From positions 186,001-250,000 of IMG/VR virus record IMGVR_UViG_3300027708_000012: a stretch of DNA of 64,000 bases; one strand, given 5' to 3'. The translations under genes were made by a program, and so were the position numbers. Shown one piece after another: positions 3,253 through 33,732 of the stretch (its first letter is position 1; each line of letters begins with the position of its first letter). The notes below the pieces were generated by a model. It was not told the origin of the DNA. It searched no databases and was given only the letters and a program-made list of their open reading frames with translations.

Positions 3253-3279
3253 AAAAAAGGGCCCTAGTGGCCCTTTTTT
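3253..3279. terminator. Bidirectional intrinsic terminator between convergent genes
   Basis: AAAAAAGGGCC-CTAGT-GGCCCTTTTTT. Confidence 0.85.
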
Positions 3280-4072
3280 ATTTAAGTCCTAATTCTTTAC
3301 GTATGCCGGTAGCACTGATATTAGTTACACTTTCGTCAAATGTTTCTTCGCCTGCGGTATAACCTACACCTCGTCCCCACCCAATGTGTACAATATTAGG
3401 AACAACTTGTATTTCGTATTGTCCTTGATATAATGGATCTAAGTCACGTCGAATAAAACCTTTAACTTTTTCCACTTCAAACGGATTACTTCCTTGCCAA
3501 CCTTGTACATCACGTACCTGGATAATAACTTGTCCAGTCTTGGATAGTAGTCGCTCAAATAGAGCACGATGGCCATCATGCCATGGTTGCCAACGTCCTA
3601 GCATCTGTACAGTTTCTTTCTTCCAATCAAATACAGGACGTCTACGATTATCTAAAATATGCCCTGCAATAAACTCGCCCCATGTTTCTGCTTTTTGTAC
3701 AGTGACGCGGAAATCATAAACTTCTGGTTCAATAAACATAGCGTTAGTATCGGCATAACGACCTTCACGGATAGTGTCTACCCAAATGGTCCAATCTGCT
3801 TTAAAATTATTACGCATTTCAACCAAGGGAGCAACAAAGTCACAGATAACATAATCCATATTGGTCATGCTATCGGCTAGTTCTCGCATACGCAAACTTT
3901 GACGAATACGTCCTTCGTGACTAAAATCCCAATCGTTATATTTCTTACGTACATCGTCGGCGTTGAGCCAGCCCACTTTTTTCTTATCTGCTTGTAAATG
4001 ATCTACAATGTGTTGTGCTAGATAAGTTTTACCAGCACCAGGCAACCCCATTACTAAAATTCTTTTTGTCAT
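3278..4072 (-). CDS. APS-kinase-like P-loop domain fused to an HxGH nucleotidyltransferase domain
   Basis: N-terminal GLPGAGKT and LNADDVR; C-terminal MLGRWQPWHDGH. Confidence 0.75.
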   Translation of the reverse strand: MTKRILVMGLPGAGKTYLAQHIVDHLQADKKKVGWLNADDVRKKYNDWDFSHEGRIRQSLRMRELADSMTNMDYVICDFVAPLVEMRNNFKADWTIWVDTIREGRYADTNAMFIEPEVYDFRVTVQKAETWGEFIAGHILDNRRRPVFDWKKETVQMLGRWQPWHDGHRALFERLLSKTGQVIIQVRDVQGWQGSNPFEVEKVKGFIRRDLDPLYQGQYEIQVVPNIVHIGWGRGVGYTAGEETFDESVTNISATGIRKELGLK

Positions 4073-4518
4073 TTTAATTCTCCTAGTTGTTCTACTTTAA
4101 CACCTGATTTTGTGAGAAATTGTATTCCATCTTCGCTACGATAAGCATCACGGAAAAACACACTGCTAATACCAGACTGAAAAATAAGTTTGGCACAATC
4201 CAAACAAGGAGCATGAGTGATAAACATACTAGCATTAAAGCCAGACTCAGTACTCTTAGCCAACTTGGCAATTGCGTTTGTTTCTGCATGTAACACCTCC
4301 GGTTTTGATTTTAAAACAGTTTCGTAGTCATCTTCAACTTCTATAGTTACTTCGTTTTCACAGTTATTGTCCCAACCAGCCGGCATACCATTGTAGCCAA
4401 TACTAATAATTCTATCATCCTTAACTACAATAGCGCCAACATGTAATCTTCGTGCATGACTTAACTCTGCAAACGTCTCTGCGGTTTTCATGTAGGCGTC
4501 TTTTAACTTCTGTTTCAT
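4069..4518 (-). CDS. dCMP deaminase
   Basis: VGAIVV, GYNG, HAETNAI, PCLDC zinc motifs. Confidence 0.9.
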   Translation of the reverse strand: MKQKLKDAYMKTAETFAELSHARRLHVGAIVVKDDRIISIGYNGMPAGWDNNCENEVTIEVEDDYETVLKSKPEVLHAETNAIAKLAKSTESGFNASMFITHAPCLDCAKLIFQSGISSVFFRDAYRSEDGIQFLTKSGVKVEQLGELK

Positions 4519-5429
4519 AGATGGCTCAAGCGAATTAATGTAGCCGCAAGATTAATCTCTGGATCTATAACTAATGTGTGATCAACTAATCCTTGTTTGA
4601 TAATAAGAATTGCTTTATCCTGCAGAGCTTCTTCTCCAAAGATTTCAATATTATCATATAGCCAGCGGTAGATATCACCCATTTCTTCTGGTCGAGCTTG
4701 TCCGCATACTAGCTTACGTGCTTCTCCAATCTTACCAGCTTTAAACAATTCTACCATGCGGATTTTATAATCTGCAGCTCCAGTATCTCCTTGCTCAGGA
4801 GTATGTAATGTACCGTCAAGACTATTCATCTGTACGGTATTGATGCATTTACGCAAGTCTGGATATGTAGCTTTAACAAACGTATCTAGTGTATCAAGAT
4901 CAAATTCTACATTCTCCTCCATGAGAATGGTAGCCACACGAGCAGTAAACTCAGCAACATCAACTCGCTCAATGTGGAATCCTTGACATCTACTGTGCAA
5001 AGCAGGGATAATTTTATTAGGATAATTGCAAGTAAGTATAAAACGAGCGGTCGTATGATATTCTTCCATGACCCCACGTAAGGCGGCTTGTGCGTTAGGT
5101 GATAAGTAATCTGCTTCATCTAGTAGTACTACCTTAAAATCTCCAAACGGAATCATCTGTACAAAGTTAATAATTTTGTCACGTACATCGTCAACACTGT
5201 TTGTTCGACTAGCGTTAATCTCTAATATATCTAAATCGTTGAGATCTAGTTCTTTAAAAAGAATTTTTGCTAGGGTAGTTTTGCCAATGCCGGCATTACC
5301 GCTAAACAATAAATGTGGTATGGATTTTTGTTTAATCCAAGTTTCAACTTGTTCTTTTTGGTGATTGTCTCTAAACACGTACCCGTCAACGGTACTTGGA
5401 CGGTATTTTTCAACCCATAGTTCTTTCAT
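4515..5429 (-). CDS. Clamp loader (RFC small subunit / T4 gp44-like AAA+ ATPase)
   Basis: WVEKYRP, GNAGIGKT, LDEADYL, SRC; start moved to MKELWVEKYRP at 5429. Confidence 0.92.
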   Translation of the reverse strand: MKELWVEKYRPSTVDGYVFRDNHQKEQVETWIKQKSIPHLLFSGNAGIGKTTLAKILFKELDLNDLDILEINASRTNSVDDVRDKIINFVQMIPFGDFKVVLLDEADYLSPNAQAALRGVMEEYHTTARFILTCNYPNKIIPALHSRCQGFHIERVDVAEFTARVATILMEENVEFDLDTLDTFVKATYPDLRKCINTVQMNSLDGTLHTPEQGDTGAADYKIRMVELFKAGKIGEARKLVCGQARPEEMGDIYRWLYDNIEIFGEEALQDKAILIIKQGLVDHTLVIDPEINLAATLIRLSHL

Positions 5430-5593
5430 ACTAATTCCTCTACAATTCCTAATACTTCTGCCATTATAAAACAAACACCCGCCATTAGCAAATTACCGGT
5501 AATCAAACATCCGCCTGCTACAATACGGATAGCACTTTTTGCAAGGCTAACATAAAAATGTCCCTTGCTTGTATCTTTAGGTTGAATTTCCAT
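5426..5593 (-). CDS. Small membrane protein, 55 aa (not in ORF track)
   Basis: MEIQPKDTSKGHFYVSLAKSAIRIVAGG...LGIVEELV; ATGA overlap with the clamp loader start. Confidence 0.7.
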   Translation of the reverse strand: MEIQPKDTSKGHFYVSLAKSAIRIVAGGCLITGNLLMAGVCFIMAEVLGIVEELV

Positions 5594-5813: not shown

Positions 5814-6212
5814 TTATTGTTCAAAACTTGGTCTTGAGAATGTTGCCGGATCAAATGTTGCATGCTCTACTTTACTGTGCTTTCCTAATTCAAGACCGTC
5901 AGGTTTCTCATCAGACACCATTAAAATTCCGTTTACATCTGCTCGACGAATTGTAATTTCAGTACCGTCTTGTTCTACTACAGTGACACCCCGAGTCCAT
6001 CGTCCGTGCTCAAGAAGTATCCATTCACCGATGCTAACGTCTTTTTGTTCGGGCCCAATTGCCCATACACGACCCCAACGGTGTTTAACGCCTTCACTTT
6101 TCCCATCGTCGCTTGGAATAAAAATACCACCTTTTGATATTTGTTCACCAAAATTCATGTCCGTAATAAGAATATTATCACGGACTGGAATAAGTTTTCC
6201 TGTTACTTTCAT
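5814..6212 (-). CDS. groES: GroES-like co-chaperonin
   Basis: LIPVRDNILI, SKGGIFIP, GRVWAIGP, VSIGEWILL pattern; extended C-terminus. Confidence 0.8.
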   Translation of the reverse strand: MKVTGKLIPVRDNILITDMNFGEQISKGGIFIPSDDGKSEGVKHRWGRVWAIGPEQKDVSIGEWILLEHGRWTRGVTVVEQDGTEITIRRADVNGILMVSDEKPDGLELGKHSKVEHATFDPATFSRPSFEQ

Positions 6213-6505
6213 TCGTTGCCTTCCGGATCCATATCAGATACATCTTTTTTACTTGTGACAGCAACTGGTGCAGGTACGGGTGTTGCCACAGGTACAGGTG
6301 CTGGAGCAGGTGCTGGCCTACTTAAATTTATTTGACTTGGAATTCCTGAAGATATAATTTTGCCGCCGGGACCTAACTTATCTCCCCTAGCATTTACCTT
6401 CATATTTCCCACAGCTGGCTGTAACTCGTTTTGGTTAATTAGTTTGCCCATGTCTACTTCTCGACCTTTAGCCGTTCTGTAAATACCTGTTTTTTGATTA
6501 GCCAT
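6209..6505 (-). CDS. Hypothetical protein with Pro/Ala/Val-rich linker
   Basis: 98-aa ORF with GGAG RBS; overlaps the groES start. Confidence 0.7.
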   Translation of the reverse strand: MANQKTGIYRTAKGREVDMGKLINQNELQPAVGNMKVNARGDKLGPGGKIISSGIPSQINLSRPAPAPAPVPVATPVPAPVAVTSKKDVSDMDPEGNE

Positions 6506-6531: not shown

Positions 6532-7041
6532 TTATCTCAAGAATTCTTGCCAGTCTAAATTATATTTGACAGAATCTATTTGGTGTACACCTAGTAAATA
6601 TAGCACAAAACTAGCCACCGAACTGCCTCTACCTACTCCCCAAACAATACCATTTTCGTTACAAGTGTCCACAAAATGTTTAGTCCATTGTAGCAATGGA
6701 ATCATTTTACGACTACGATATTCTTCCATTTCGTCGTAAACACGTTCTTTTTGTTGGTTAGTTGTGCAACGTTTAATACACCATTCTTCTACATCAAAGT
6801 CTTTATACTCAGGCGGCATAAACCAATCACTTTGAAGTGCTTGATCAAAATCCTCAATGCTGATAGAGTCTAACTGATCGTTAAATCTTTGAAATGTAAA
6901 CCCAGCAGTTTTTTCCAACTGCTCCATGTCTTCCGTATAGTCTACAGTTAGATCTTTGAGGTTGGTTAGTTTTCCTTGATAAAGGAACTTAAATATATCT
7001 TGTGTATTAAAAATAGGATTACCAAATTTGTCTAGGCGCAT
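6532..7041 (-). CDS. Stand-alone fragment of DNA polymerase III alpha (DnaE-like, GRGS region)
   Basis: GIVWGVGRGSSVASFVLYLLGVHQIDSVKYNLDWQEFLR then stop; only 169 aa. Confidence 0.8.
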   Translation of the reverse strand: MRLDKFGNPIFNTQDIFKFLYQGKLTNLKDLTVDYTEDMEQLEKTAGFTFQRFNDQLDSISIEDFDQALQSDWFMPPEYKDFDVEEWCIKRCTTNQQKERVYDEMEEYRSRKMIPLLQWTKHFVDTCNENGIVWGVGRGSSVASFVLYLLGVHQIDSVKYNLDWQEFLR

Positions 7042-7048
7042 AGCCTAC

Positions 7049-7077
7049 ATTTTAACTGACTTTAATTAAGCTGTCAA
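7049..7077 (-). promoter_or_regulatory. Sigma70-type promoter for the DnaE-like fragment
   Basis: TTGACA, 17 nt, TAAAAT; ATG only 8 nt after the -10 box. Confidence 0.65.
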
Positions 7078-7282
7078 GTTTTTTATCCCGGTTTTCCATC
7101 ATTTTTTCTAGAGTCGCTTGTCGGCGTTTGCCCAATTCTTCATTATATGTATCCAACATCAAACTTATTTGTTGTTTGACTCCGGGATTGCTGGTCATAA
7201 AATATTTTTTGGTAAGATCAAAGATCTTAGTTTCAAGATCTCCGTCTTTAATTTCTGACAAATTTCCAGAAAGTGGGTGCAT
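7052..7282 (-). CDS. Hypothetical protein
   Basis: 76-aa ORF coupled to the upstream gene. Confidence 0.65.
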   Translation of the reverse strand: MHPLSGNLSEIKDGDLETKIFDLTKKYFMTSNPGVKQQISLMLDTYNEELGKRRQATLEKMMENRDKKLDSLIKVS

Positions 7283-7857
7283 TAGTATTCGCCTAGATTT
7301 TTTATGTATACAGTGGACCCACCGTCAACAGTCCACACTTCAAATACTTCTACTTTTCCGGTAGTAGGAAGGGATACAGTAACAGGATTATTACCGTATG
7401 GCCACCCGGTAGCTGTTTTTAAAACTCCGTTATTTGTTGTAGACAGTGTTGCAGTTCTTGGACTTCCGTTATTGGTTAATATAAGTCTAACAGTACTCCA
7501 CATTCCAGCATCGGGCCAATTTTCAAAAGTTAAAGTTGCATTAGCTGAAAGTGTTACTTGTTGGATAGGACCGTTATCTACGTTAATTAATGCGCCGCCC
7601 GCACCAACAGTGCCTGCATTATAGAATACACCATTGAATTGTGAATACAATCCGTTATTAAATATTGTACCCTGCAATTGATTAACAGGCTGTGTAACAT
7701 CTAATCCATTAGTCTGTAACAGTGTAATTTCTGCAGATGCTTCTGCAAGTCCAGCTTGGATTGCTGTGAAATTATCCCTAAAACCTTGGCTATCGTTATC
7801 TTGTCCTGCTACCGGGTATGCTACATTGATTGCTGAGTAATTTATTTGGCTTGTCAT
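7282..7857 (-). CDS. Putative virion structural protein
   Basis: INVAYPVAGQDNDSQGFRDNF N-terminus; beta-rich, T/N/G-rich; TAAATA upstream at 7888-7893. Confidence 0.65.
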   Translation of the reverse strand: MTSQINYSAINVAYPVAGQDNDSQGFRDNFTAIQAGLAEASAEITLLQTNGLDVTQPVNQLQGTIFNNGLYSQFNGVFYNAGTVGAGGALINVDNGPIQQVTLSANATLTFENWPDAGMWSTVRLILTNNGSPRTATLSTTNNGVLKTATGWPYGNNPVTVSLPTTGKVEVFEVWTVDGGSTVYIKNLGEY

Positions 7858-10733
7858 ACTGTTATCCTGTTATTCTTAAATATTAGATATTTATCGTCGG
7901 TATATCCTGCCGCCGAAGTTATTGTATATCTATCAATTGTGTAATCTATTTTGGTAAAATCAAAACCGCTATGTTTGATATTTAATAAAATAGTATCTGC
8001 TGTTCCAACCTTACAGAAACATAGTGGTATAGCTAGTATGTATCCTAGTTGTTGTTTTTGTCCTGCTGGAATGGACCGCATCCATAGCGGCAAATAGTTT
8101 CTTTCAGTTTTTGCCAATATAGGAGTTCCATCTACAGTATAGCTATTAATAGCTGTGCTAATTCTTTCTTGCCAATTTGTAATACTACTAGGGAAATATG
8201 TATTAGGCTCGGGCGTATTGGTTTGATATCCTGTGCTGTCTACTGTGATATTATAATCAGGCCGATTAACAAACGGAGCATTAACTTTTAAAGAGTCTAA
8301 TTCAAATTGTTCAAAAGTTGTAGGATTTCTTACTTGCTCGAACGTGTGCGGATCTAATACAATTTTTCCATGTTCGTCTAGTACTTTATGAACTTCAAAT
8401 CCTTTTTGCCAAATTGAGTTGCTTATATCTGCAGTAATGTTTTCTGAAGAATTATTGGACCTAATTGATAATGGTAAATGTTTTCCATTAGGTTCTAGAG
8501 GATCAACCATTTGTATATAAACTACTTCATATACTGATTCATTAGATACTGGATCTACAGCTATTGATTTTTGTATACTTTTAAATTGAAATCGTTTACG
8601 CTTAGTGTTTAAGCCCATAGCCCCAACAATAGATGCAGCTGATTGCGCTTCTATTCCAGCATATACCAACATTGTTAGTGATGTCTGCATACCAAAATTT
8701 GTATCTGTTGGTCTGTATATACTTGATGGTGTAAATACGGTTGGATTATTAATAAAACTTTTAAATAAATCTCTTTGTTCAGGAATCAAATATGGTCTTA
8801 CTGTGATGTTGTTATAAACAATATCGTTAGGGCTACTAATTGTAATTGTAAATTCTTTAGTAATTGCACTGTACCCATATTGATCTGCAGACTCGACACT
8901 GAATGTATAGGTTCTATCTACTGTGGTAGTATTTCTATCAAATGTAGTAGTTCTAGAATCAAATGTTATTAGTCCTAGTGTATCTGTATTTGCATTATAA
9001 AATTGATTCGGTATGCCAACTAGCTCGCCATCTAATTTTAAATGTATTCCTGGCGGCAAACTTCCTTTAACTACTGTATACGTAACTTTTGCACCTGCCA
9101 CAGATGTTTCAGCCAATAGACGAAGTGTGCAAATATAATCTGCAGGAATAGTTCCTAAATTACGTGGACTAATCCAAGTAATTTGACTATGGATACTTCC
9201 TAATATAGTTAAATTAAACTCTTTGCTACTACTAACTAATTCTTCACTACTATCGCCGATTCGGGTTGCTGTAATTGTAAATGTAAACTTTTCTGTAACA
9301 CTGGGTTGATATGGAACCATTCCATATAAATCTCCTGTTAGCGGGTCAAAATCAACTCCGGTAGGAAATTTACATAGTGTTCCTATATAAAATGCTGTAT
9401 TATTTGGAATACTAATTAATAGATTAGATGTTAGTGTTAATCTATATCGCGTGTTACTTAATTTATCAACTTGTATTATTTGATATAAATGGTCATACGC
9501 ACCCTCAACATAATTATTAAGAGTAAACCACTGACCAATTTTTGGAGCAACTGACACATTATCTACTGTAACATGATTGCTTGTAATAATATTATCAAGG
9601 CCATTTATTTGATAAGCTACAGCATATGTTTCGTGGTTAGTTGGTTCTTTTCTAAAAGTTACACCGGTATTATCATATAATGCTACAGGTACTGTAAGGT
9701 AATTATTAGATCTAAATGTTCCTAAATTACTATTTGTTAACCACTGGGGGTTTCTTACATAGGTACTATCTGCGGTAAACGCATCGGCTTGACCATCTAA
9801 AATAGTTGCATCGGCTCTGAATTCGTCTGTTCCTGCAACAAATATTTTAAAAATTCGTTGTGCGTTACTAACACCATCTGTTACAGTTACTTTAAACTGA
9901 TAATTTAAACTTAATGAATGATTTATTGATGCCGGGATATTGTAATCAAACATTACGGTATCGTACTGATAGCTATTAAAACTATTAGTATCACCGCTAA
10001 CGTCAGCAACATTCATTAAACTATTAGTTCCAGTTATCTTTGGTATGGGCAAGATATATCCACTGATAAGTCCAGAATTACTTAAAGTTAGCCCTGGCGG
10101 TAAACTTCCATCTCCGCTGGCTATAAAAAAACGTAATTCTCTATTTGTGGCAATACTTAAATCTATAACTTCTAATTGATATTCTATGTAGGTTTGATCT
10201 GTAGTATAAAATTGTTTGTTTGGACCAACAGGCAAATTTCCAGCAGATGTAATAAATGTTGGACGATGATTACTATTGATTGACATAAAGAATGTTCTGT
10301 CCGCAAAACCGGATGCAGTAACATTAACAGAATTGATGTTTTCTGTAGTGCTAACTCCAAATGTTCCGTTGTGATGGTCGGATGTAATATATGTCCCAGC
10401 AGGAATACCAGTTCCTGACAATTTCATACCAACTAAAAATGTTCCAGAAACAACTGTTCTTGGAATAAATGCACCTCCAGAAAAGGTACTATTTTTACTA
10501 CTAGCACTTGCTGACGCTCTTATACAAAATTCAAATTTAGTAAAATACGCAACAATGTACGGGCTACCAAGAATATGATTTCCTTTGATATATAACCCTC
10601 CTGGCAATTTACCAGAGATTACATTATAATTTACTCCCGAATCATTTGTTACCGGCAATGGAATATTTACGGTGCGTTCTTCTGTGAGAACTCCAAAATT
10701 ATAACCCGATTCTTTATTCCAAATTTTTAGCAT
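7854..10733 (-). CDS. Baseplate wedge-like structural protein with Ig-like repeats
   Basis: 959 aa; repeated SGxLPxGLxL / YxFxVxxxD Ig-like segments; lies in the structural module. Confidence 0.65.
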   Translation of the reverse strand: MLKIWNKESGYNFGVLTEERTVNIPLPVTNDSGVNYNVISGKLPGGLYIKGNHILGSPYIVAYFTKFEFCIRASASASSKNSTFSGGAFIPRTVVSGTFLVGMKLSGTGIPAGTYITSDHHNGTFGVSTTENINSVNVTASGFADRTFFMSINSNHRPTFITSAGNLPVGPNKQFYTTDQTYIEYQLEVIDLSIATNRELRFFIASGDGSLPPGLTLSNSGLISGYILPIPKITGTNSLMNVADVSGDTNSFNSYQYDTVMFDYNIPASINHSLSLNYQFKVTVTDGVSNAQRIFKIFVAGTDEFRADATILDGQADAFTADSTYVRNPQWLTNSNLGTFRSNNYLTVPVALYDNTGVTFRKEPTNHETYAVAYQINGLDNIITSNHVTVDNVSVAPKIGQWFTLNNYVEGAYDHLYQIIQVDKLSNTRYRLTLTSNLLISIPNNTAFYIGTLCKFPTGVDFDPLTGDLYGMVPYQPSVTEKFTFTITATRIGDSSEELVSSSKEFNLTILGSIHSQITWISPRNLGTIPADYICTLRLLAETSVAGAKVTYTVVKGSLPPGIHLKLDGELVGIPNQFYNANTDTLGLITFDSRTTTFDRNTTTVDRTYTFSVESADQYGYSAITKEFTITISSPNDIVYNNITVRPYLIPEQRDLFKSFINNPTVFTPSSIYRPTDTNFGMQTSLTMLVYAGIEAQSAASIVGAMGLNTKRKRFQFKSIQKSIAVDPVSNESVYEVVYIQMVDPLEPNGKHLPLSIRSNNSSENITADISNSIWQKGFEVHKVLDEHGKIVLDPHTFEQVRNPTTFEQFELDSLKVNAPFVNRPDYNITVDSTGYQTNTPEPNTYFPSSITNWQERISTAINSYTVDGTPILAKTERNYLPLWMRSIPAGQKQQLGYILAIPLCFCKVGTADTILLNIKHSGFDFTKIDYTIDRYTITSAAGYTDDKYLIFKNNRITV

Positions 10734-10742
10734 GAATGAACC

Positions 10743-11741
10743 TTACTTGATTAAAACAGCAGAAAAAACAGTTCCGGCATTTGCTTGTAAAACTTGTCCT
10801 GAACTAGAACTTGTAAAAGCTGCCAAAGATACATAATCGTTGATACCATTTAGATAAACTGGAAAAGACATTGGTACTGTTCTATTAACATTTGTATTAA
10901 CTTGATTTTCATTTAAATGAACAGAACTAGTATTTTTTAAAATTTTTACATACATTGAACCTGTTCCTAACCCAGATGCAAATGTTACAGAATAAGATAT
11001 ATTATACCAACCTGGCATGTTTGGGCGAAACTTATTATTTGAAAACCAAACGTTTACATCTGACTGTGCAGATAATGTTATAACTGTTTCACTGTTAGTT
11101 GGTATAGTTTGTACTGAAGTTAAACTAGCAGTTGTTACTGTGGTACTAACTGGCACAACTTCGGTACGAGCTAGCTCTCCAAAATCGTAATCGTTTTCTA
11201 GCGGATTATTGAATCCACTAAGAACTCCAGTGCCATTTAAATCGATAGTATAGCCTTTAGGATAATTTTGAAATCCTGTAGGATATGTAATTGTTCCTAG
11301 ATCTAAATCTAAACGATTGCTAGATAGTAGTGTTGATAAAATATTATTTGAGACAGGAAAATCTAAACCATATATCGTACTATGTGTGTCACCGCCGTAG
11401 GTATAATTTCCGTTAAGATTTAAATTACCTGAAAGTTTAGGAGTACTGTCATTTTCTAATTTTGTAACTGATGATAAATGTATATGATTACTATTACTTG
11501 TATCTACAATTATAGTGGTATCAGTTGTTATTGTTTTAAATTCTAAATTTAAATTAGATGTATTTTTTCCAGTAAGTATGGCCGCGCCATTTCCAAGATT
11601 AGTTCCATTAAGTACGGCACCTTCATCAAATAAGGTTTTGAAATTATCATTAACTTTAAGAAATGCCGTACGTAAATCATCTCCAGTACCGTCGTTTGGA
11701 TAAGTTCCTAACTTTATTTCTTTTAATGTTGGTATTGTCAT
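10743..11741 (-). CDS. Tail fibre/baseplate protein with T4 gp10-like N-terminal motif
   Basis: LGTYPNDGTGDDLRTAFLKVNDNF; PKLSGNLNLNG; C1q/TNF-like-looking C-terminus. Confidence 0.7.
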   Translation of the reverse strand: MTIPTLKEIKLGTYPNDGTGDDLRTAFLKVNDNFKTLFDEGAVLNGTNLGNGAAILTGKNTSNLNLEFKTITTDTTIIVDTSNSNHIHLSSVTKLENDSTPKLSGNLNLNGNYTYGGDTHSTIYGLDFPVSNNILSTLLSSNRLDLDLGTITYPTGFQNYPKGYTIDLNGTGVLSGFNNPLENDYDFGELARTEVVPVSTTVTTASLTSVQTIPTNSETVITLSAQSDVNVWFSNNKFRPNMPGWYNISYSVTFASGLGTGSMYVKILKNTSSVHLNENQVNTNVNRTVPMSFPVYLNGINDYVSLAAFTSSSSGQVLQANAGTVFSAVLIK

Positions 11742-11816
11742 AATCCGCTCTCTTTAGTATATTTACCCGTTTTTAAACATTGAATCTGTTGCGTAACGCT
11801 GTGTAGTTTTGTCTCA

Positions 11817-14800
11817 TTATACCAATCTCTCAATTGAAATCATATTGTTGTTGTAAGCGCCACCAATCATCACAGTAATGCGATAGGCTTTGGTGTAGGC
11901 GTAATTCAGTACATAGGTTGCAACGTCACCTTCGCCGGGAAAGTTCCATGAAAAAATTGATGCGCTTGGGGCTGTTGTCATTGAAAAACCAGCAGATGCT
12001 CCGCCAGAACCGACACCCGAGCCATAAGTACCACCTATATAACAAGTTGCTGTTCCGGATACTGTGGCCAAACTCAATCCACGCTGACCGCCGGTTGTCA
12101 CTGTGGCTTTGATATTGTCCATTGTGACAAATGTACCAGCATTGACAAAAGCACTTACACGATTGTTTAGCAGTGTTCCTACACCGGCCGCTGCTTGTGA
12201 AAGATCAATATAAGCGCCGCGAGTTGTGCCACCAGCTTCAAAGAATCTAATTCTATCGATATACTGGTCAATAACAACTTGACTGCCGCTTAGACTAGAA
12301 TTTGGTGATTTTGCTAGATCGACTTCTCCACCTTCGTCACCACTGGCATTTGTTGATACCAAAATACTGCCAGTGGCATTACCAGCAGGTCCTTGTGGGC
12401 CTGTAGCGCCTGTGTCGCCTTTATCGCCTTTTGGTCCTGTAGTTAAAGTTGGTTTGTTAGTCAAGTCATCGTAATTGCCACTGAATGGAGCGGCTACACT
12501 GATAGTACCATCCAATGTCACACTGATATTAGAGCCAACCTTAACACCGCCTAATACACTTGATGTAGCTGCTGGTAGTGTGTATGTGGTGCCACCATAT
12601 GTGCTACCATCACTATTTTTAATAACACCGCTTGCGGGCAATGTCAAATTACCACCCACGCCAAAGATCCAACCTCGTGAATTGTCCACATCTGTCATTA
12701 TCACTATGTCAGCATTGTCTGATTTGAGTGAGAATGCACCCCAGGTTTGTGTTCTAATAATACTTTGATCCGGCAACTTTGTTGTACCATCTGTGCCAAA
12801 GGTCCAAGTTTCTTGACCAGCTTTTAATACCAAATCTTCACTGTTAGAAATATCTCCAGCAACAGTTAGTCCAAATGGCAAGTATGTTTGTCCGCTACCA
12901 GCATCAAAACTCCAGTGTTTCCCATTAAGGTCCACATTAAAATCAGTGTCGCCAGTTGCAAAAAATCCACCACTACTACCGGATATGTTTATGGCGGAAG
13001 TTTCTGGTAATGTTAGCGAGCCATCTGTGCCAAAGGTCCATGTTTTCTTGCCACCGCCAATATTATCAGTAAATGAATTTAATTCAAATCCGCCAACTGC
13101 GTCGGCCTGGAATATTCCATCTCCGTATATATTAGTGCCATTGGGCAGGCTCAGTGTGCCATCTGTGCCAAACTCCCAGTAGTTTCCAACTTCAGTGTCT
13201 ATGTTGCCTGTAAAAATGTTCAAACCGTTGCCGGCTATAACACCACCTGGTGGCATGATAAATCTGCCAACTGTATCGGTATCAAACACAAAGGTATGAC
13301 CTTTAGATTCAATATTGACATTGTTAGTGGCAAACAGGTTAAGATTACCAGAGGCTGATTTAATAGTTGAGTCGGCTGGTACGGTCAAAGTGCCATCAGT
13401 TCCAAAAGTCCAATCGTTACTATTAGATGTAAGTTTAATAGCGTTGAGTGAATTGATAGTTGAAGGACTTACAGGAGGCGCACTACACTCGACATTTGCG
13501 GTCCATCCAGCAAAGCCAGGATATTCTACATTGTTTAATACAATAGTAAGAGTATATCCAGCTATGCCGTGAGCGGTTTCAGTAAAGGTATAAGTATCAC
13601 CAGTTTTATAACCTGGATTGTTTTGTATAGGGAATATCTGTGCCACTGTGGTGGATACCACATCATGGGCATCTGCGGTAAAGGTCACATCCAAGGTCCA
13701 AGCATCGCCGCCATATGGTCCAATGTCTGGTGCAAACCCGTACACTGGCAACAGTACCGCAGAAAATGTTTTGCTCCATGTTTTGGTCGGAACTGTTAAT
13801 GAGCCGTTATTATCAAATGTCCAAGTGTAAGCAGTATCAAGCGCATTAGTTGTTAGTTCAACATTATATCCAATCCTAACATTTGTCTTTGGTCCATTGC
13901 CTACAACATCTAAACTGTATAAATTCAAAGTGCTTTCCGAAGAGGAAATGCTGGCCCAGTTATATCCTTCCCAGTTGAAATTGATAGCACCGTTACCACC
14001 AAGACTGCCGTCTGGCATTGTCAATACACCATCTGTGCCAAAGGTCCACGCCTGATAAGAACCTGTGTTATCAAAGCGAGTATTGATTAAAAAATCTGTT
14101 CCGTTTGGACCAAAGATACCAGCAGAGCCTTCTAGAGATCCAATCAATGTACCATTAGGGAATGTTAGATAACCATCTGTGCCAAAGGTCCAAATGCTTG
14201 GATCCATAACATCATTGGAATTTAGTGTTGCTATTTCTACAGTAGCATCTGTTTGAGTTGGTTGTAGTCTAGTGTTATTGCTATAAGCACCTATTTCAAA
14301 ATTGCCGTTGAGAGTTAGTCTATCGTTAGAATTACCAATAACAAGCCCTCCCGGCAATGTTGTAGTACCATCTGTGCCAAAAGTCCAAAAATTTTGATTA
14401 CTGTTAATTCTTATAGGGCTAGCACTTTGTAGTAATGCTCCAAGACCATCCGATCCGTTAGGAAGGTTTAGGTATCCATCTACGCCGAGACTTACTGTAT
14501 AATCACCATTTACTAAGGTTGATCCATTTCCAACACTAGGTGTATTCCAACTCAATGTGCCTGTACCATTGTTGTACAAGTAACCAGCTGTGCTGGTAGG
14601 TAACACAGCAAAGTTAGGTGCATTTGTGATGTTGTTCCATGTTAAGGAAGTACTGGTAATATAATTGGCATCGTTGGTAAAAGTACTCACATTGGTGGGC
14701 TTGTTTTTAATATAGTCAATGTGTGTTGAATCAGTTTCATTCCAATCAGCTTGTGTTTGATTGGGAATACTGATAACACCATTTAAGTCCACATTGATAT

Positions 14801-14981
14801 TTGTACCAACAGTAACACCGCCCAATCTGCTATTGCTAGCCGGAGGAAGTATGTAACCAATGCTACCAGCTTGCGCACCCTCTACAGTCCACTTCTCTCC
14901 ATCCCAGGTGTAGGTAATTCCGTTTTGTGCAAAAAAAGTTTGCCCTTGGTATGTAGGTGTTGGAAAACTTAGTATAGTCAT
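11817..14981 (-). CDS. Tail fibre protein with WTFGTDG repeats and a collagen-like stretch
   Basis: About 10-12 WxFxxDGxLxxP units; GPKGDKGDTGATGPQGPAGN. Confidence 0.8.
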   Translation of the reverse strand: MTILSFPTPTYQGQTFFAQNGITYTWDGEKWTVEGAQAGSIGYILPPASNSRLGGVTVGTNINVDLNGVISIPNQTQADWNETDSTHIDYIKNKPTNVSTFTNDANYITSTSLTWNNITNAPNFAVLPTSTAGYLYNNGTGTLSWNTPSVGNGSTLVNGDYTVSLGVDGYLNLPNGSDGLGALLQSASPIRINSNQNFWTFGTDGTTTLPGGLVIGNSNDRLTLNGNFEIGAYSNNTRLQPTQTDATVEIATLNSNDVMDPSIWTFGTDGYLTFPNGTLIGSLEGSAGIFGPNGTDFLINTRFDNTGSYQAWTFGTDGVLTMPDGSLGGNGAINFNWEGYNWASISSSESTLNLYSLDVVGNGPKTNVRIGYNVELTTNALDTAYTWTFDNNGSLTVPTKTWSKTFSAVLLPVYGFAPDIGPYGGDAWTLDVTFTADAHDVVSTTVAQIFPIQNNPGYKTGDTYTFTETAHGIAGYTLTIVLNNVEYPGFAGWTANVECSAPPVSPSTINSLNAIKLTSNSNDWTFGTDGTLTVPADSTIKSASGNLNLFATNNVNIESKGHTFVFDTDTVGRFIMPPGGVIAGNGLNIFTGNIDTEVGNYWEFGTDGTLSLPNGTNIYGDGIFQADAVGGFELNSFTDNIGGGKKTWTFGTDGSLTLPETSAINISGSSGGFFATGDTDFNVDLNGKHWSFDAGSGQTYLPFGLTVAGDISNSEDLVLKAGQETWTFGTDGTTKLPDQSIIRTQTWGAFSLKSDNADIVIMTDVDNSRGWIFGVGGNLTLPASGVIKNSDGSTYGGTTYTLPAATSSVLGGVKVGSNISVTLDGTISVAAPFSGNYDDLTNKPTLTTGPKGDKGDTGATGPQGPAGNATGSILVSTNASGDEGGEVDLAKSPNSSLSGSQVVIDQYIDRIRFFEAGGTTRGAYIDLSQAAAGVGTLLNNRVSAFVNAGTFVTMDNIKATVTTGGQRGLSLATVSGTATCYIGGTYGSGVGSGGASAGFSMTTAPSASIFSWNFPGEGDVATYVLNYAYTKAYRITVMIGGAYNNNMISIERLV
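12787..14387. repeat. Dispersed 20-bp repeat CCATCTGTGCCAAAGGTCCA
   Basis: Exact at 12787, 13021, 14029, 14173; 1-3 mismatches at 14368, 13159, 13393. Confidence 0.85.
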
Positions 14982-14993
14982 TATAGGTCCTTA

Positions 14994-15505
14994 TTACCAA
15001 TTATTGTTATTATCAAATGCTATTCTGCGCCAAATTGGTGTGCCCAGGCCTTGCCAAGTTGCTGTACAGAAATAATAATAGTTGTCATCTGCACTCCATT
15101 CGCCTTGTGTATCGCCACTAGCACCTTCTGCATGCTCGGGAGGAATTGCCTTCCATTGGCTTAGAGGAGGACTAGCTTCGACCCAGTGATTTTGATAGTA
15201 CACAAATAACCTACCACTTTGATCATCATACCATATATTATTTTGACTAGGATTACCAGGAGGACTAGCATCTAATGTAATTACAGCATTACCAAACGCA
15301 TCAGGAATCAGTAAGTAACCAGTTCCCGATCCGTTAACAGCTAATAATTTATTAGCGTCCCCTATTCCAGGAGCTGGCACTACACCAGTTCCTAAACTGG
15401 CGTATAACTCATCAAAGTTATTATTGCATTTTATAAAAGCGGTTCGTATAGCATCCCCGGCTTTGTCATTTGCACTTGCACCAACTAGTATATTTTGTTT
15501 AGACA

Positions 15506-15506
<1 letters not shown>
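14994..15506 (-). CDS. Short fibre/adaptor protein with T4 gp10-like N-terminal motif
   Basis: VGASANDKAGDAIRTAFIKCNNNFDELY; NIWYDDQSGRLFVYY module. Confidence 0.7.
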
Positions 15507-27535
<12,029 letters not shown>

Positions 27536-32512: not shown

Positions 32513-33700
32513 TTACTGAACTTTAAGAAGAATAGTATCTTCGTTAATGCGTCCGTTCATTTTAGTGTCTGTAGCATTGATCTCTTCTAGGAATTTGCGC
32601 AGAGCAATCTTACCTGCAGACTTAAACTCTTTGAGTTTTTCTTCAGGTTTACGCACAGTCTTTTGTACACTCTTAAACTCATCAAAGCCCGTAATTGTAG
32701 TACCTTTAACACTTAATGTATTAAACTCTGCAGCCACATACTTGCCCAACTTACGAGATTTAGTGTTAAACACCCAAAGTTCGCCAGACCCAATAATATC
32801 CTTTGGATTAATACTTACAAGTTTTAGAGGTTCGTTAGACTTCATAAACTTGAGTTTAGCAACCAGCTTTTCAACGGGCACTGATTTCTTAGCACGAGGA
32901 GCACGATTAACTTTGGCTTCTTGTGCCAACATATCACACGCACTCGCAATTTCTTGATAAAATGCAATCAGATTGCGGATTTGCTTTTTAGTACGATGAC
33001 TATATGCTTCCTTCAATTGTTCATCGCCTTTACCGCTAGCAAGTTCCTCAAGTTCTGCCAAATCTCGTGCATACAACTCTTTAATAATTCGAGCATGCGC
33101 AGCCTTAACTTCTTTGCCTTTTAGCAAGTTGAGCATTTTAAATGCTTTAGGATCAAAATTCTCAGGATCTGTTTGGAAATTTTCAATGGCATCTTCAATT
33201 TCTTCGGTCATGCGATACGATGCTTCACGCACACGTTCTTGAATGGTAGGCTGTGCTACTACAGGTTTAGTATCGACAACTTCATCTTCCTTGTCGTTTT
33301 TGCCTGCTTCAATTACTTCGACAATTGCTTTACGCAACCAAGCACTTGTATCTCGACCATCATTAAAATCTTCACGAACGGCAGGCATGCCGCGATTCAA
33401 ACAACTAGCAATAGCACCCATTGTGACATTGCATCGATTATCTTTAGTTTTCTTAAAGGCAGCAATGTCTTCTTTTGTACAACCAACATTAGTCATCCAT
33501 TTGATAATAGCTGGCTTCAAATCTTTGCCGCTAAATTCCAAACGGTAATATTCCATAGCACCATGCCAATGGCGCAAAAATTGGTTAGCATCCATGGACT
33601 CTACATTATCCCATACGGGACTATAATCTTTAGCCGCTTTGGTGCGATGTGCTGTAACTTGTTTTTTAGTTACACGGGTTTTGGTTGCTACTTTAGCCAT
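32513..33700 (-). CDS. Hypothetical phage protein
   Basis: 395-aa ORF from MAKVATK (GGAG RBS); own sigma70 promoter. Confidence 0.8.
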   Translation of the reverse strand: MAKVATKTRVTKKQVTAHRTKAAKDYSPVWDNVESMDANQFLRHWHGAMEYYRLEFSGKDLKPAIIKWMTNVGCTKEDIAAFKKTKDNRCNVTMGAIASCLNRGMPAVREDFNDGRDTSAWLRKAIVEVIEAGKNDKEDEVVDTKPVVAQPTIQERVREASYRMTEEIEDAIENFQTDPENFDPKAFKMLNLLKGKEVKAAHARIIKELYARDLAELEELASGKGDEQLKEAYSHRTKKQIRNLIAFYQEIASACDMLAQEAKVNRAPRAKKSVPVEKLVAKLKFMKSNEPLKLVSINPKDIIGSGELWVFNTKSRKLGKYVAAEFNTLSVKGTTITGFDEFKSVQKTVRKPEEKLKEFKSAGKIALRKFLEEINATDTKMNGRINEDTILLKVQ

Positions 33701-33732
33701 TTTTTGCTCCTGCTTTGTTAAACAATACACAT

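What the first reader, a model, noticed from the sequence alone, without database searches (positions are those of the whole stretch)
6532..7077. DNA polymerase III alpha split just before its catalytic aspartates, on a nearly leaderless mRNA
Seen: a 169-aa gene carrying the DnaE GRGS motif that stops at KYNLDWQEFLR. In DnaE the PDIDxD catalytic motif follows within about 10 residues; no such continuation lies downstream here. It has its own TTGACA-17-TAAAAT promoter with ATG 8 nt after the -10 box. Inference: a family C polymerase module expressed as separate polypeptides, with the partner elsewhere in the genome. It could act as a primase or repair polymerase, or the fragment may be a host-DnaE interactor.
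Basis: partly seen in the sequence, partly recalled or inferred. Interest (0 to 1): 0.6.

Follow-up and report, generated by a model that had tools for sequence, protein, structure and literature searches.

The report
Split mini DNA polymerase III, N-half
This 169-residue gene is the front half of a stripped-down, two-piece relative of the bacterial replicative DNA polymerase; the back half, starting exactly at the catalytic aspartates, lies 175 kb away in the same 345-kb freshwater phage genome, an arrangement predicted from sequence in 2021 but never tested at the bench.

Summary
Window 6532-7041 (minus strand) encodes a 169-aa protein. Its residues 96-168 align without gaps to E. coli Pol III alpha 320-392, including R362-G363-S364, and it stops five residues before the catalytic Asp motif.

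The predicted partner exists. It is a 191-aa ORF at genome 16527-17102 that begins MPDIDIDF and keeps D401/D403, K553/D555, the RPG motif and the S759-H760 steric gate.

Both halves are under purifying selection (dN/dS about 0.1). Both occur in jumbo phage isolates, always at least 29 kb apart where both positions were listed. A complex model supports binding: score 0.90, best control 0.19.

The genome also has a family B polymerase, a DnaG-type primase, a DnaB-like helicase and a clamp loader. It has no PHP or HhH domain.

This is the "split minimal DNA polymerase III alpha" that Iyer et al. (2021) described by computation. The kind is known and its biochemistry is untested.

Two points go beyond that paper:
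- Natural unsplit 375-376-aa versions occur in four metagenomic contigs.
- In this freshwater clade, TTGACA-17-TAAAnT sits 6-7 nt before the ATG and is conserved even at synonymous sites of the upstream gene. This fits a near-leaderless transcript, but no transcription start was mapped.

The parts
6532..7041 (-). N-terminal unit of the split minimal DNA polymerase III alpha (169 aa). It holds a clade-specific aa 1-91 region and the palm half with the G137-R138-G139-S140 triphosphate-binding motif. Its partner, the C unit (191 aa, starts MPDIDIDF), lies outside the window at G000:C1:16527-17102 (-), which is L002:967-1542(-).
   Evidence: Family and structure matches: PF07733 E 7.6e-12. phrog_11127 end to end, E 1.7e-39. 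Ungapped alignment to E. coli Pol III alpha 320-392. Conservation: dN/dS 0.10. 1380 homologous clusters, of which the 120 best listed are 168-169 aa. Partner: found. Complex score 0.90 against a best control of 0.19.
7072..7077 (-). -35-like hexamer TTGACA, lying inside codons Leu-Asp-Lys of the upstream gene.
   Evidence: Found. It is invariant in 52 unique upstream sequences, including the synonymous third positions (always CTT/ATT and GAC). In the neighbouring N genes GAC is only 28% of Asp codons and CTT only 10% of Leu codons.
7049..7054 (-). -10-like hexamer TAAAAT. Its first three bases are the TAA stop codon of the upstream gene. 7 nt separate it from the ATG at 7041.
   Evidence: Found. 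TAA-A-n-T is conserved with a fixed 17-nt spacer. The distance to the ATG is 7 nt in 44 and 6 nt in 8 unique sequences.
7033..7047 (-). 5-bp inverted repeat TAGGC-TATGC-GCCTA that would place the AUG in a hairpin loop on any transcript that starts further upstream.
   Evidence: Found. It folds at about -6 kcal/mol in most related loci. Divergent loci instead have a hairpin around the -10 box. No clean covariation was seen.
7052..7282 (-). 76-aa ORF of unknown function whose 3' end carries the promoter-like element. It is the last gene of a run of tail-fibre and baseplate-like (late) genes.
   Evidence: There is no Pfam or PHROG match for this ORF. Genes further upstream match tail-fibre and baseplate PHROGs.
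6209..6505 (-). 98-aa conserved small ORF (phrog_14844) directly downstream, with an AAGGAG ribosome-binding site.
   Evidence: A small ORF holds the same position after the N unit in Pseudomonas phage MIJ3 and Vibrio phage 2.275.O.
5814..6212 (-). GroES/Cpn10-like co-chaperonin, part of the conserved gene order after the N unit.
   Evidence: PF00166 E 4.4e-06. Chaperonin genes follow the N unit in MIJ3 and the Vibrio phage.
4515..5474 (-). RFC/gp44-like AAA+ clamp-loader subunit. It places the N unit in a replication module.
   Evidence: AAA, DNA_pol3_delta2, Rad17 and Gp44_lid matches. The same neighbourhood occurs in MIJ3 and Yersinia phage fHe-Yen9-03.

Best explanation
The gene encodes the N-terminal subunit of a two-subunit, minimal family C (Pol III alpha-type) nucleotidyltransferase of a T4-like, PolB-encoding jumbo phage from freshwater.

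The N unit supplies the palm half with the GRGS motif that holds the incoming triphosphate. It also has a clade-specific 90-residue region that wraps onto the partner.

The C unit is encoded about 175 kb away, next to the primase-helicase genes. It supplies the three catalytic aspartates (D3, D5, D65), the lysine beside the third Asp, a reduced finger region with the RPG motif, and the Ser-His steric gate.

The two polypeptides associate without covalent joining. There is no room for intein halves. Together they rebuild one active site, with the GRGS strand lying against the DIDID strand. The thumb is reduced to a short linker. The PHP, HhH, clamp-binding and OB parts of cellular DnaE are absent.

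The most likely activity is dNTP-dependent DNA synthesis in an accessory role, such as gap filling or repair, beside the phage's family B replicase.

In this freshwater clade the N gene is the first gene of an early or middle replication operon. It appears to be transcribed from its own sigma-70-type promoter, embedded in the end of the preceding late gene, with the start codon at or within a base or two of the predicted transcription start.

Shown: homology, partner, conservation, co-occurrence, fused relatives, promoter conservation.

Inferred: physical binding, catalytic activity, biological role, transcription start.
For: Homology and residue map.
- N 96-168 = E. coli 320-392.
- C M1-P2-D3-I4-D5 = M399-P400-D401-F402-D403.
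- C K63/D65 = K553/D555, and C RPG = 639-641.
- C S166-H167 = S759-H760, the steric gate of PMC8485763.
- Only E. coli residues 394-398 are unaccounted for between the halves.

Structure:
- C model aa 66-188 against 2hnh 557-781: Z 9.1, rmsd 3.0 A, 118 aligned. Twelve Pol III/PolC entries rank first, then Z drops to 3.4.
- The top Foldseek hits for both halves are C-family polymerases.

Complex:
- ipSAE 0.90 in three runs, best of three controls 0.19. That mark was reached by 58 of 80 solved complexes and 2 of 110 mismatched pairs. These counts hold only roughly here, because my own alignments were used.
- The runs agree in at least 96% of contacts, and the partner's pLDDT is at least 89.
- N 130-143 contacts C 2-9.

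Selection and spread:
- dN/dS is 0.10 for N and about 0.12 for C.
- 1380 N clusters and at least 7958 C clusters exist; the listed hits are of near-constant length.
- Both halves are present, at least 29 kb apart, in PA5oct-like, Atu_ph07, Phosso, SCTP-2, XaC1, Vibrio 2.275.O and several Rak2-group phages (fHe-Yen9-03/04, XbC2, Kaldavass), with catalytic motifs kept at 35-47% identity.

Fusion evidence: 375-376-aa single ORFs combine phrog_11127 and phrog_11778 in four contigs from four samples.

Genome context:
- PolB is present.
- A DnaG-type primase and a DnaB-like helicase lie beside C.
- A clamp loader lies beside N.
- There is no PHP or HHH_6 domain anywhere in the genome.

Literature: Iyer et al. 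2021 predicted the same arrangement.

Promoter.
Against: No biochemical or structural data exist for any member.

The enzyme lacks a thumb, most of the fingers, a proofreading domain and any recognisable clamp-binding motif, so processive templated synthesis is not assured.

The high complex score may partly reflect the model's memory of the single-chain DnaE fold. It shows likeness, not binding. Single-chain models are only moderate, with pLDDT 66.8 and 72.9, and no Foldseek E-value reaches 0.001.

On the near-leaderless claim:
- No transcription start data exist.
- One 151-nt contig from an RNA library (6941-7091) crosses the predicted start. It may be read-through RNA or carried-over DNA.
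- The promoter is absent from the N gene of Yersinia phage fHe-Yen9-03.
- Lack of a Shine-Dalgarno core is not distinctive, because about half of the window's genes lack one.
Confidence: 0.78

Rival explanations
1. The two units do assemble, but the enzyme is not a templated DNA polymerase. It would be another kind of Pol-beta-fold nucleotidyltransferase, for example a template-independent end-adding enzyme, a primer or oligonucleotide synthase, or a DNA- or protein-nucleotidylating enzyme.
For: The thumb is reduced to a short linker. E. coli 642-752 and everything after about residue 781 are missing. No PHP or HhH domain exists in the genome. The phage already has a full PolB replicase.
Against: The motifs retained are those that DnaE uses for dNTP binding and sugar selection, including the invariant steric-gate His167 and the RPG finger motif (PMC8485763). 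Both genes sit in replication modules.
Confidence: 0.15
2. The N fragment works alone, for example as a decoy or binder of the host DnaE or replisome, and its link with the C unit is incidental.
For: The two genes are far apart and belong to different operons. The first 91 residues have no counterpart in DnaE.
Against: GRGS and most predicted interface residues are invariant. The two halves co-occur in isolate genomes. The break leaves only about 5 residues unaccounted for. The complex model passes its controls. Natural fusions cover the whole N unit, including aa 1-91.
Confidence: 0.04
3. The gene is a decaying remnant of a captured dnaE, or an artefact of a frameshift or assembly error.
For: It covers only a small part of DnaE and stops just before the catalytic motif.
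Against: dN/dS is 0.10 over both halves of the gene. The length and stop codon are identical in 79 of 80 independent loci. The break point is the same in cultured phages at 28-38% identity. The gene has a dedicated PHROG family of the same length.
Confidence: 0.01
4. The TTGACA-17-TAAAAT element is conserved for a reason other than transcription initiation next to the ATG. It could be a protein, RNA-structure or regulator-binding constraint, with the N gene translated from read-through late transcripts.
For: The element lies inside a coding region and includes its stop codon. A hairpin can enclose the AUG on longer transcripts. An RNA-library contig spans 6941-7091. Relatives outside this clade lack the element.
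Against: Synonymous positions within TTGACA are invariant against the local codon preference. The spacer is always 17 nt. The same consensus, with ordinary leaders of 16-56 nt, precedes many other genes of this genome. The gene marks the change from late structural genes to replication genes.
Confidence: 0.3

Closest known systems
Split minimal DNA polymerase III alpha of group 2.2 jumbo phages (Iyer, Anantharaman, Krishnan, Burroughs, Aravind 2021, Viruses 13:63; PHROG families 11127 and 11778)
   Same: The N unit carries the NTP-binding palm half, and the C unit carries the Mg-binding and template-binding part. The two are encoded by distant genes. The genome is a jumbo phage genome with PolB, an RFC-like clamp loader, DnaB and DnaG. 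No other Pol III domains are present.
   Different: Nothing essential differs. This copy comes from an uncultured freshwater phage. In its clade the N gene carries a conserved sigma-70-type promoter 6-7 nt before the ATG, and that paper has no mention of leaderless transcripts. The unsplit relatives found here are not described in the passages of that paper that I read.
Bacterial DnaE / PolC (family C replicative polymerases; PDB 2hnh, 2hpi, 3e0d, 3f2b)
   Same: A Pol-beta-like palm with the GS motif, three catalytic Asp, the K beside the third Asp, the RPG finger motif and the Ser-His steric gate, all in the same order.
   Different: The phage enzyme has 360 residues in two chains, against 1160 or more in one chain. 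It has no PHP domain, a vestigial thumb and truncated fingers. It has no HhH, clamp-binding, OB or tau-binding parts. It has a new 90-residue N-terminal region.
Intein-split DnaE of cyanobacteria (DnaE-n / DnaE-c)
   Same: A family C polymerase encoded by two distant genes.
   Different: The cyanobacterial halves carry split-intein parts and are joined by protein trans-splicing. I recall from my own knowledge that their split lies in another part of the protein (after about residue 774). Here the halves end and begin on DnaE sequence with only about 5 residues missing, and no Hint domain is present. Association must therefore be non-covalent.
Split family B polymerases of some T4-related phages and archaea (from my own knowledge, not tested here)
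   Same: A replicative-type polymerase made from two separately encoded polypeptides that reassemble.
   Different: They have a different fold and family, their genes are usually adjacent, and the split does not pass through the nucleotidyltransferase core.

Membership tests
Split minimal Pol III alpha of group 2.2 jumbo phages | N unit of about 170 aa with the GRGS palm half, ending before the catalytic Asp motif | tested here: met
   phrog_11127 matched over positions 9-171 of 171, E 1.7e-39. The unit ends at the equivalent of E. coli residue 393.
Split minimal Pol III alpha of group 2.2 jumbo phages | Separate C unit of about 190 aa that starts at the DxD motif and carries the third Asp and a reduced finger region | tested here: met
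   L002:967-1542(-) begins MPDIDIDF. phrog_11778 E 9.8e-59. Motif map.
Split minimal Pol III alpha of group 2.2 jumbo phages | The two units are encoded by distantly located genes | tested here: met
   C1:192532-193041 against C1:16527-17102, about 175 kb apart. They are at least 29 kb apart in every isolate genome listed for both halves.
Split minimal Pol III alpha of group 2.2 jumbo phages | Host genome is a jumbo phage with a family B polymerase and T4-like replication genes, and no other Pol III domains | tested here: met
   The record is 345,369 bp. PolB E 2.3e-37. Clamp loader. Toprim primase and DnaB-like helicase. No PHP or HHH_6.
Split minimal Pol III alpha of group 2.2 jumbo phages | The two units form one active enzyme | not testable with these tools
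   Only a prediction is available: ipSAE 0.90 against a best control of 0.19, plus natural fusions. No biochemistry exists.
Cellular DnaE / PolC | Catalytic palm residues (GS motif, three Asp) | tested here: met
   R138-G139-S140 lie in the N unit, and D3, D5 and D65 in the C unit. All are invariant.
Cellular DnaE / PolC | Single polypeptide with an N-terminal PHP domain, thumb, full fingers, HhH and clamp-binding region | tested here: not met
   There are two chains of 169 and 191 aa. PF02811 and PF14579 are absent from the genome. PF17657 gives only 19.3 bits inside the C ORF. The structural alignment covers E. coli 557-781 with large deletions.
Intein-split DnaE | Split-intein halves at the junction | tested here: not met
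   The N unit ends ...EFLR and the C unit starts MPDIDID. Only E. coli 394-398 are missing. Neither unit has an intein or Hint match in Pfam or PHROGs.
Leaderless mRNA genes | Transcript 5' end at, or within a few bases of, the A of the start codon | not testable with these tools
   The geometry fits: the -10 box ends 6-7 nt before the ATG in all 52 unique relatives. Only sparse contigs from RNA libraries were available, and they cannot show transcript ends.

The most novel reading that the evidence does not exclude
The split may be functional rather than a neutral accident. Under this reading the active site forms only when two separately controlled replication modules are both expressed. One module is the N unit, on a near-leaderless early sigma-70 transcript beside the clamp loader. 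The other is the C unit, inside the primase-helicase operon. The resulting 360-residue enzyme would be the smallest known family C polymerase and would have a specialised, non-replicase role. The natural single-chain relatives found here give a ready comparison for testing what the split adds.
Probability: 0.15. Interest if true: 0.65.

Novelty: new member of a known kind. Interest (0 to 1): 0.38.

Why it matters
A polymerase active site built from two polypeptides encoded 175 kb apart, with the cut between the triphosphate-binding motif and the metal-binding aspartates, is unusual. It defines a very small working core for family C polymerases.

The family is abundant. More than a thousand N clusters and several thousand C clusters were found in metagenomes. 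It is also present in well-studied therapeutic-candidate phages such as PA5oct and the RaK2 group. No member has been assayed.

The concept is not new, since Iyer et al. published it in 2021. The value here has three parts:
- An independent confirmation with a residue-level map.
- Natural fused forms that support the one-enzyme reading and offer an easier construct for biochemistry.
- A conserved promoter arrangement that makes a simple, testable prediction about how the N unit is expressed.

Tried and rejected
- Nucleotide search of the 2-kb region against the phage collection found nothing. Only protein-level relatives exist there.
- I searched five long but incomplete IMG/VR contigs that carry the N gene for the C unit and found none. 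This is uninformative, because the contigs are 25-44% complete and the halves lie about 175 kb apart.
- RNA evidence: three lake metatranscriptome runs hold only a few 151-218-nt contigs at depth 2-4 over this stretch. Contigs cannot show transcript ends, and DNA carry-over cannot be excluded. No transcription start could be called.
- The single-chain AlphaFold models were only moderate (pLDDT 66.8 and 72.9). No Foldseek E-value reached 0.001, although C-family polymerases ranked first.
- Intein trans-splicing is rejected, because there are no spare residues and no Hint domain.
- Pseudogene and assembly error are rejected.
- Primase role is judged unlikely, because a DnaG-type primase is present and the steric-gate His is kept.
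- I treated lack of a Shine-Dalgarno sequence as possible support for a leaderless mRNA and dropped it. Only 32 of 63 genes in the window have a 4-nt SD core.
- The hairpin around the AUG showed no clean compensatory changes, so it remains a note only.
- I tested whether the nearest stand-alone C genes have an adjacent N gene. The upstream gene is phrog_11058, not an N unit.
- The direction of evolution, fission or secondary fusion, could not be settled. The fused clade is nested among stand-alone C proteins in a quick, midpoint-rooted tree with supports of 83-92.
- I looked for later experimental work on this enzyme in three of the four literature searches and found none (and for one 2026 survey).

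Full report
**What is in the sequence**

The ORF lies on the minus strand at 6532..7041 and encodes 169 aa ending KYNLDWQEFLR.
- Pfam places aa 92-168 in DNA_pol3_alpha (PF07733, E 7.6e-12).
- A phage family of exactly this size, phrog_11127 with 171 positions, matches it end to end (E 1.7e-39).
- Against solved structures, aa 96-168 align without a gap to E. coli Pol III alpha 320-392.
- G137-R138-G139-S140 is therefore the G361-R362-G363-S364 motif, and the protein stops at the equivalent of residue 393, just before D401/D403.
- None of the three frames downstream holds a DxDxD motif. The next gene is an unrelated 98-aa ORF with its own AAGGAG site.

**The partner**

The window is positions 186001-250000 of a 345,369-bp virus record estimated 94% complete. 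A scan of that genome with PF07733 gave only two places: this gene and a short match at C1:17061-17111.

The second place is the start of a 191-aa ORF, C1:16527-17102 on the minus strand (L002:967-1542). It begins M-P-D-I-D-I-D-F and matches phrog_11778 (E 9.8e-59).

Profile alignments to solved Pol III alpha chains give a colinear map:
- M1-P2-D3-I4-D5 = E. coli M399-P400-D401-F402-D403.
- K63/D65 (KIDFL) = K553/D555.
- R132-P133-G134 = the RPG of 639-641.
- S166-H167 = S759-H760. H760 is the proposed steric gate against ribonucleotides (PMC8485763).

Only E. coli residues 394-398 are missing between the end of one protein and the start of the other. This leaves no room for split-intein halves.

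Structurally, model residues 66-188 of the C unit superpose on 2hnh 557-781 (Z 9.1, rmsd 3.0 A, 118 residues). Twelve C-family polymerase entries rank first, then Z falls to 3.4.

The thumb (E. coli 433-510) is reduced to a short linker. The stretch 642-752 is cut to about 26 residues. Everything after about residue 781 is absent.

The genome has no PHP and no HHH_6 domain anywhere. The finger family matches only below threshold, inside the C ORF. The enzyme is therefore a two-piece minimal version, not a full DnaE in many pieces.

**Is it functional?**

Selection:
- Across 55 distinct sequences from IMG/VR loci, the N gene has a median dN/dS of 0.10. The value is the same for the DnaE-like half and for the clade-specific first 91 residues.
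- The C gene gives about 0.12, with dS near saturation.
- The catalytic motifs are invariant in both alignments.

Spread:
- The word-based protein search found 1380 N clusters. The 120 best listed are 168-169 aa.
- It found at least 7958 C clusters. The best listed are mostly 190-196 aa.

Isolates:
- Both halves occur in PA5oct-like Pseudomonas phages, Atu_ph07, Phosso, SCTP-2, XaC1, Vibrio phage 2.275.O and several Rak2-group phages (fHe-Yen9-03/04, XbC2, Kaldavass).
- They are always at least 29 kb apart. In RaK2 itself only the C unit was among the listed rows.
- The break point is the same in these phages. The MIJ3 N unit ends ...KEFLK, and the PA5oct, RaK2 and Atu_ph07 C units start a few residues before D-x-D-I-D.

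Pseudogene, frameshift and assembly error are therefore excluded.

**Do the halves work together?**

A complex model of the two chains scored ipSAE 0.90 in each of three runs, against 0.19 for the best of three controls.
- That mark was reached by 58 of 80 solved complexes and 2 of 110 mismatched pairs. These counts hold only roughly here, because my own alignments were used.
- The runs share at least 96% of their contacts, and the partner's pLDDT is at least 89.
- The interface puts N 130-143 (the GVGRGSS strand) against C 2-9 (PDIDIDF), and the invariant W73/F74 against C 19 and 37-39.

The score may partly reflect the model's knowledge of the single-chain DnaE fold. It supports binding but does not show it.

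Independent support comes from natural fusions.
- A full HMMER search with the C profile found a 375-aa protein that matches the C profile at residues 190-372.
- Its first 189 residues align with the whole N unit (E 8e-26).
- It matches phrog_11127 over aa 8-180 and phrog_11778 over aa 190-374.
- Two further 376-aa relatives exist.
- In all, the fused gene is seen in four contigs from four samples. The junction reads ...KEFIK-DNKEGIYNIA-D[FL]D[IV]DT.
- It sits in the same gene order as the C unit of split phages, followed by an opposite-strand phrog_11637 ORF and a phrog_14467 structural gene (compare).

In a quick tree of C halves, the fused clade is nested among stand-alone C proteins with supports of 83-92 under midpoint rooting. 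Whether it is ancestral or a secondary fusion is open.

**Context and likely role**

The phage has a family B polymerase. A Toprim/DnaG-type primase and a DnaB-like helicase lie just downstream of the C unit. That gene order is shared with PA5oct, RaK2 and Atu_ph07. The N unit is followed by a small conserved ORF, a GroES-like gene, an RFC/gp44-like clamp loader and a dCMP deaminase. This order is also shared with relatives.

A dedicated primase and the retained steric-gate histidine argue against a primase role. The complementary partner argues against a stand-alone host-DnaE binder. The best reading is an accessory dNTP-using polymerase. Without a thumb, proofreading domain or clamp-binding motif, another nucleotidyl-transfer activity cannot be excluded.

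**Promoter**

TTGACA (7077-7072), 17 nt, TAAAAT (7054-7049) and 7 nt precede the ATG.

One such match is not above chance in this region: 9 sites were found against 8.4 expected. The conservation is what matters:
- TTGACA is invariant in 52 distinct upstream sequences from related loci.
- The spacer is always 17 nt.
- The -10 box is TAA-A-n-T.
- The ATG follows after 7 nt in 44 sequences and 6 nt in 8.

The hexamer lies in codons Leu-Asp-Lys of the preceding gene, and the -10 box begins with that gene's stop codon. The synonymous third positions inside the hexamer never vary (always CTT or ATT, and GAC). Neighbouring third positions are only 40-70% conserved. In the N genes, GAC is only 28% of Asp codons and CTT only 10% of Leu codons. 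This points to selection on the DNA sequence itself.

The same consensus, with ordinary leaders of 16-56 nt, precedes many genes of this genome. Two or three other cases have leaders of 8 nt or less.

The genes upstream are tail-fibre and baseplate-like. The element therefore sits where late structural genes give way to replication genes.

A start at or next to the A of the ATG is thus a reasonable prediction, but it is not shown:
- The only RNA data are sparse contigs, one of which crosses the site.
- The arrangement is specific to this clade and absent from Yersinia phage fHe-Yen9-03.
- Lack of a Shine-Dalgarno core is common in this window.

**Comparison with what is known**

Iyer et al. 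[quoted passage not shown] They suggested that it cooperates in synthesis of one strand or in repair.

The present gene meets every defining feature of that family that can be tested. It is a new member of a published kind. I found no later experimental study.

**Limits**

All functional statements are inferences from sequence and models. The habitat (freshwater and lake metagenomes) comes from run labels. The host is unknown.

Noticed in passing
L171:1066-2193, L172:519-1649, L173:1827-2957, L174:1292-2422 (proteins P0297, P0392, P0391): Natural unsplit versions of the minimal Pol III alpha (375-376 aa, N unit plus a 10-residue linker plus C unit) occur in four low-GC (25-27%) metagenomic contigs from four samples. 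They sit in the gene order typical of the C unit. In a quick tree they nest among stand-alone C proteins, so it is unresolved whether they are ancestral or secondary fusions.
   Followed up: partly
window 7033-7047 (minus strand): The inverted repeat TAGGC-TATGC-GCCTA would hold the N gene's AUG in the loop of a 5-bp hairpin (about -6 kcal/mol) on any transcript that starts upstream. It is conserved in most close relatives. Divergent relatives instead have an inverted repeat flanking the -10 box. No clean covariation was seen.
   Followed up: partly
G000:C1:185-7160 (+), and C1:167214 (-) and C1:259145 (-); outside the window: Eight perfect TTGACA-17-TATAAT promoters cluster at the start of the record. 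This is probably the early region, and most have leaders of 19-56 nt. Two other genes, a 247-aa ORF just downstream of the PolB gene and a 71-aa ORF, have the -10 box only 8 and 6 nt before the ATG, like the N gene.
   Followed up: no
L089:3942-4889 (-) and L089:8964-9491 (-), i.e. G000:C1:12941-13888 and 17963-18490: A carbamoyltransferase-like gene (PF02543, E 1.4e-28) sits between the DnaG-type primase and the DnaB-like helicase. A 2OG-Fe(II) oxygenase gene lies a few genes upstream of the C unit. Together with the dCMP deaminase at window 4069-4518, these may point to modified DNA bases.
   Followed up: no
window 15506-27535 (minus strand): A single 4009-aa ORF lies among genes with tail-fibre, baseplate and Ig-like matches (window 7854-15506). 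It was not analysed.
   Followed up: no
window 6209-6505, 5814-6212 and 4515-5474 (minus strand): In this window the N unit is followed by a small phrog_14844 ORF, a GroES-like gene and the clamp loader. A small ORF and a chaperonin gene also follow the N unit in Pseudomonas phage MIJ3 and Vibrio phage 2.275.O. The clamp loader follows in MIJ3 and Yersinia phage fHe-Yen9-03. The small ORF might be a further partner of the polymerase.
   Followed up: no
whole window: Only 32 of 63 putative genes have a 4-nt Shine-Dalgarno core within 20 nt of the listed start, and no tRNA gene lies in the 64 kb. Some starts may be mis-set. For example, the listed GTG start of 32513-33730 lies 2 nt after a consensus promoter.
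   Followed up: no
window 3278-4072 (minus strand): A 264-aa protein has an APS-kinase/KTI12-like P-loop N-terminal part (E 5e-11) and an unassigned C-terminal half. It lies next to the dCMP deaminase.
   Followed up: no
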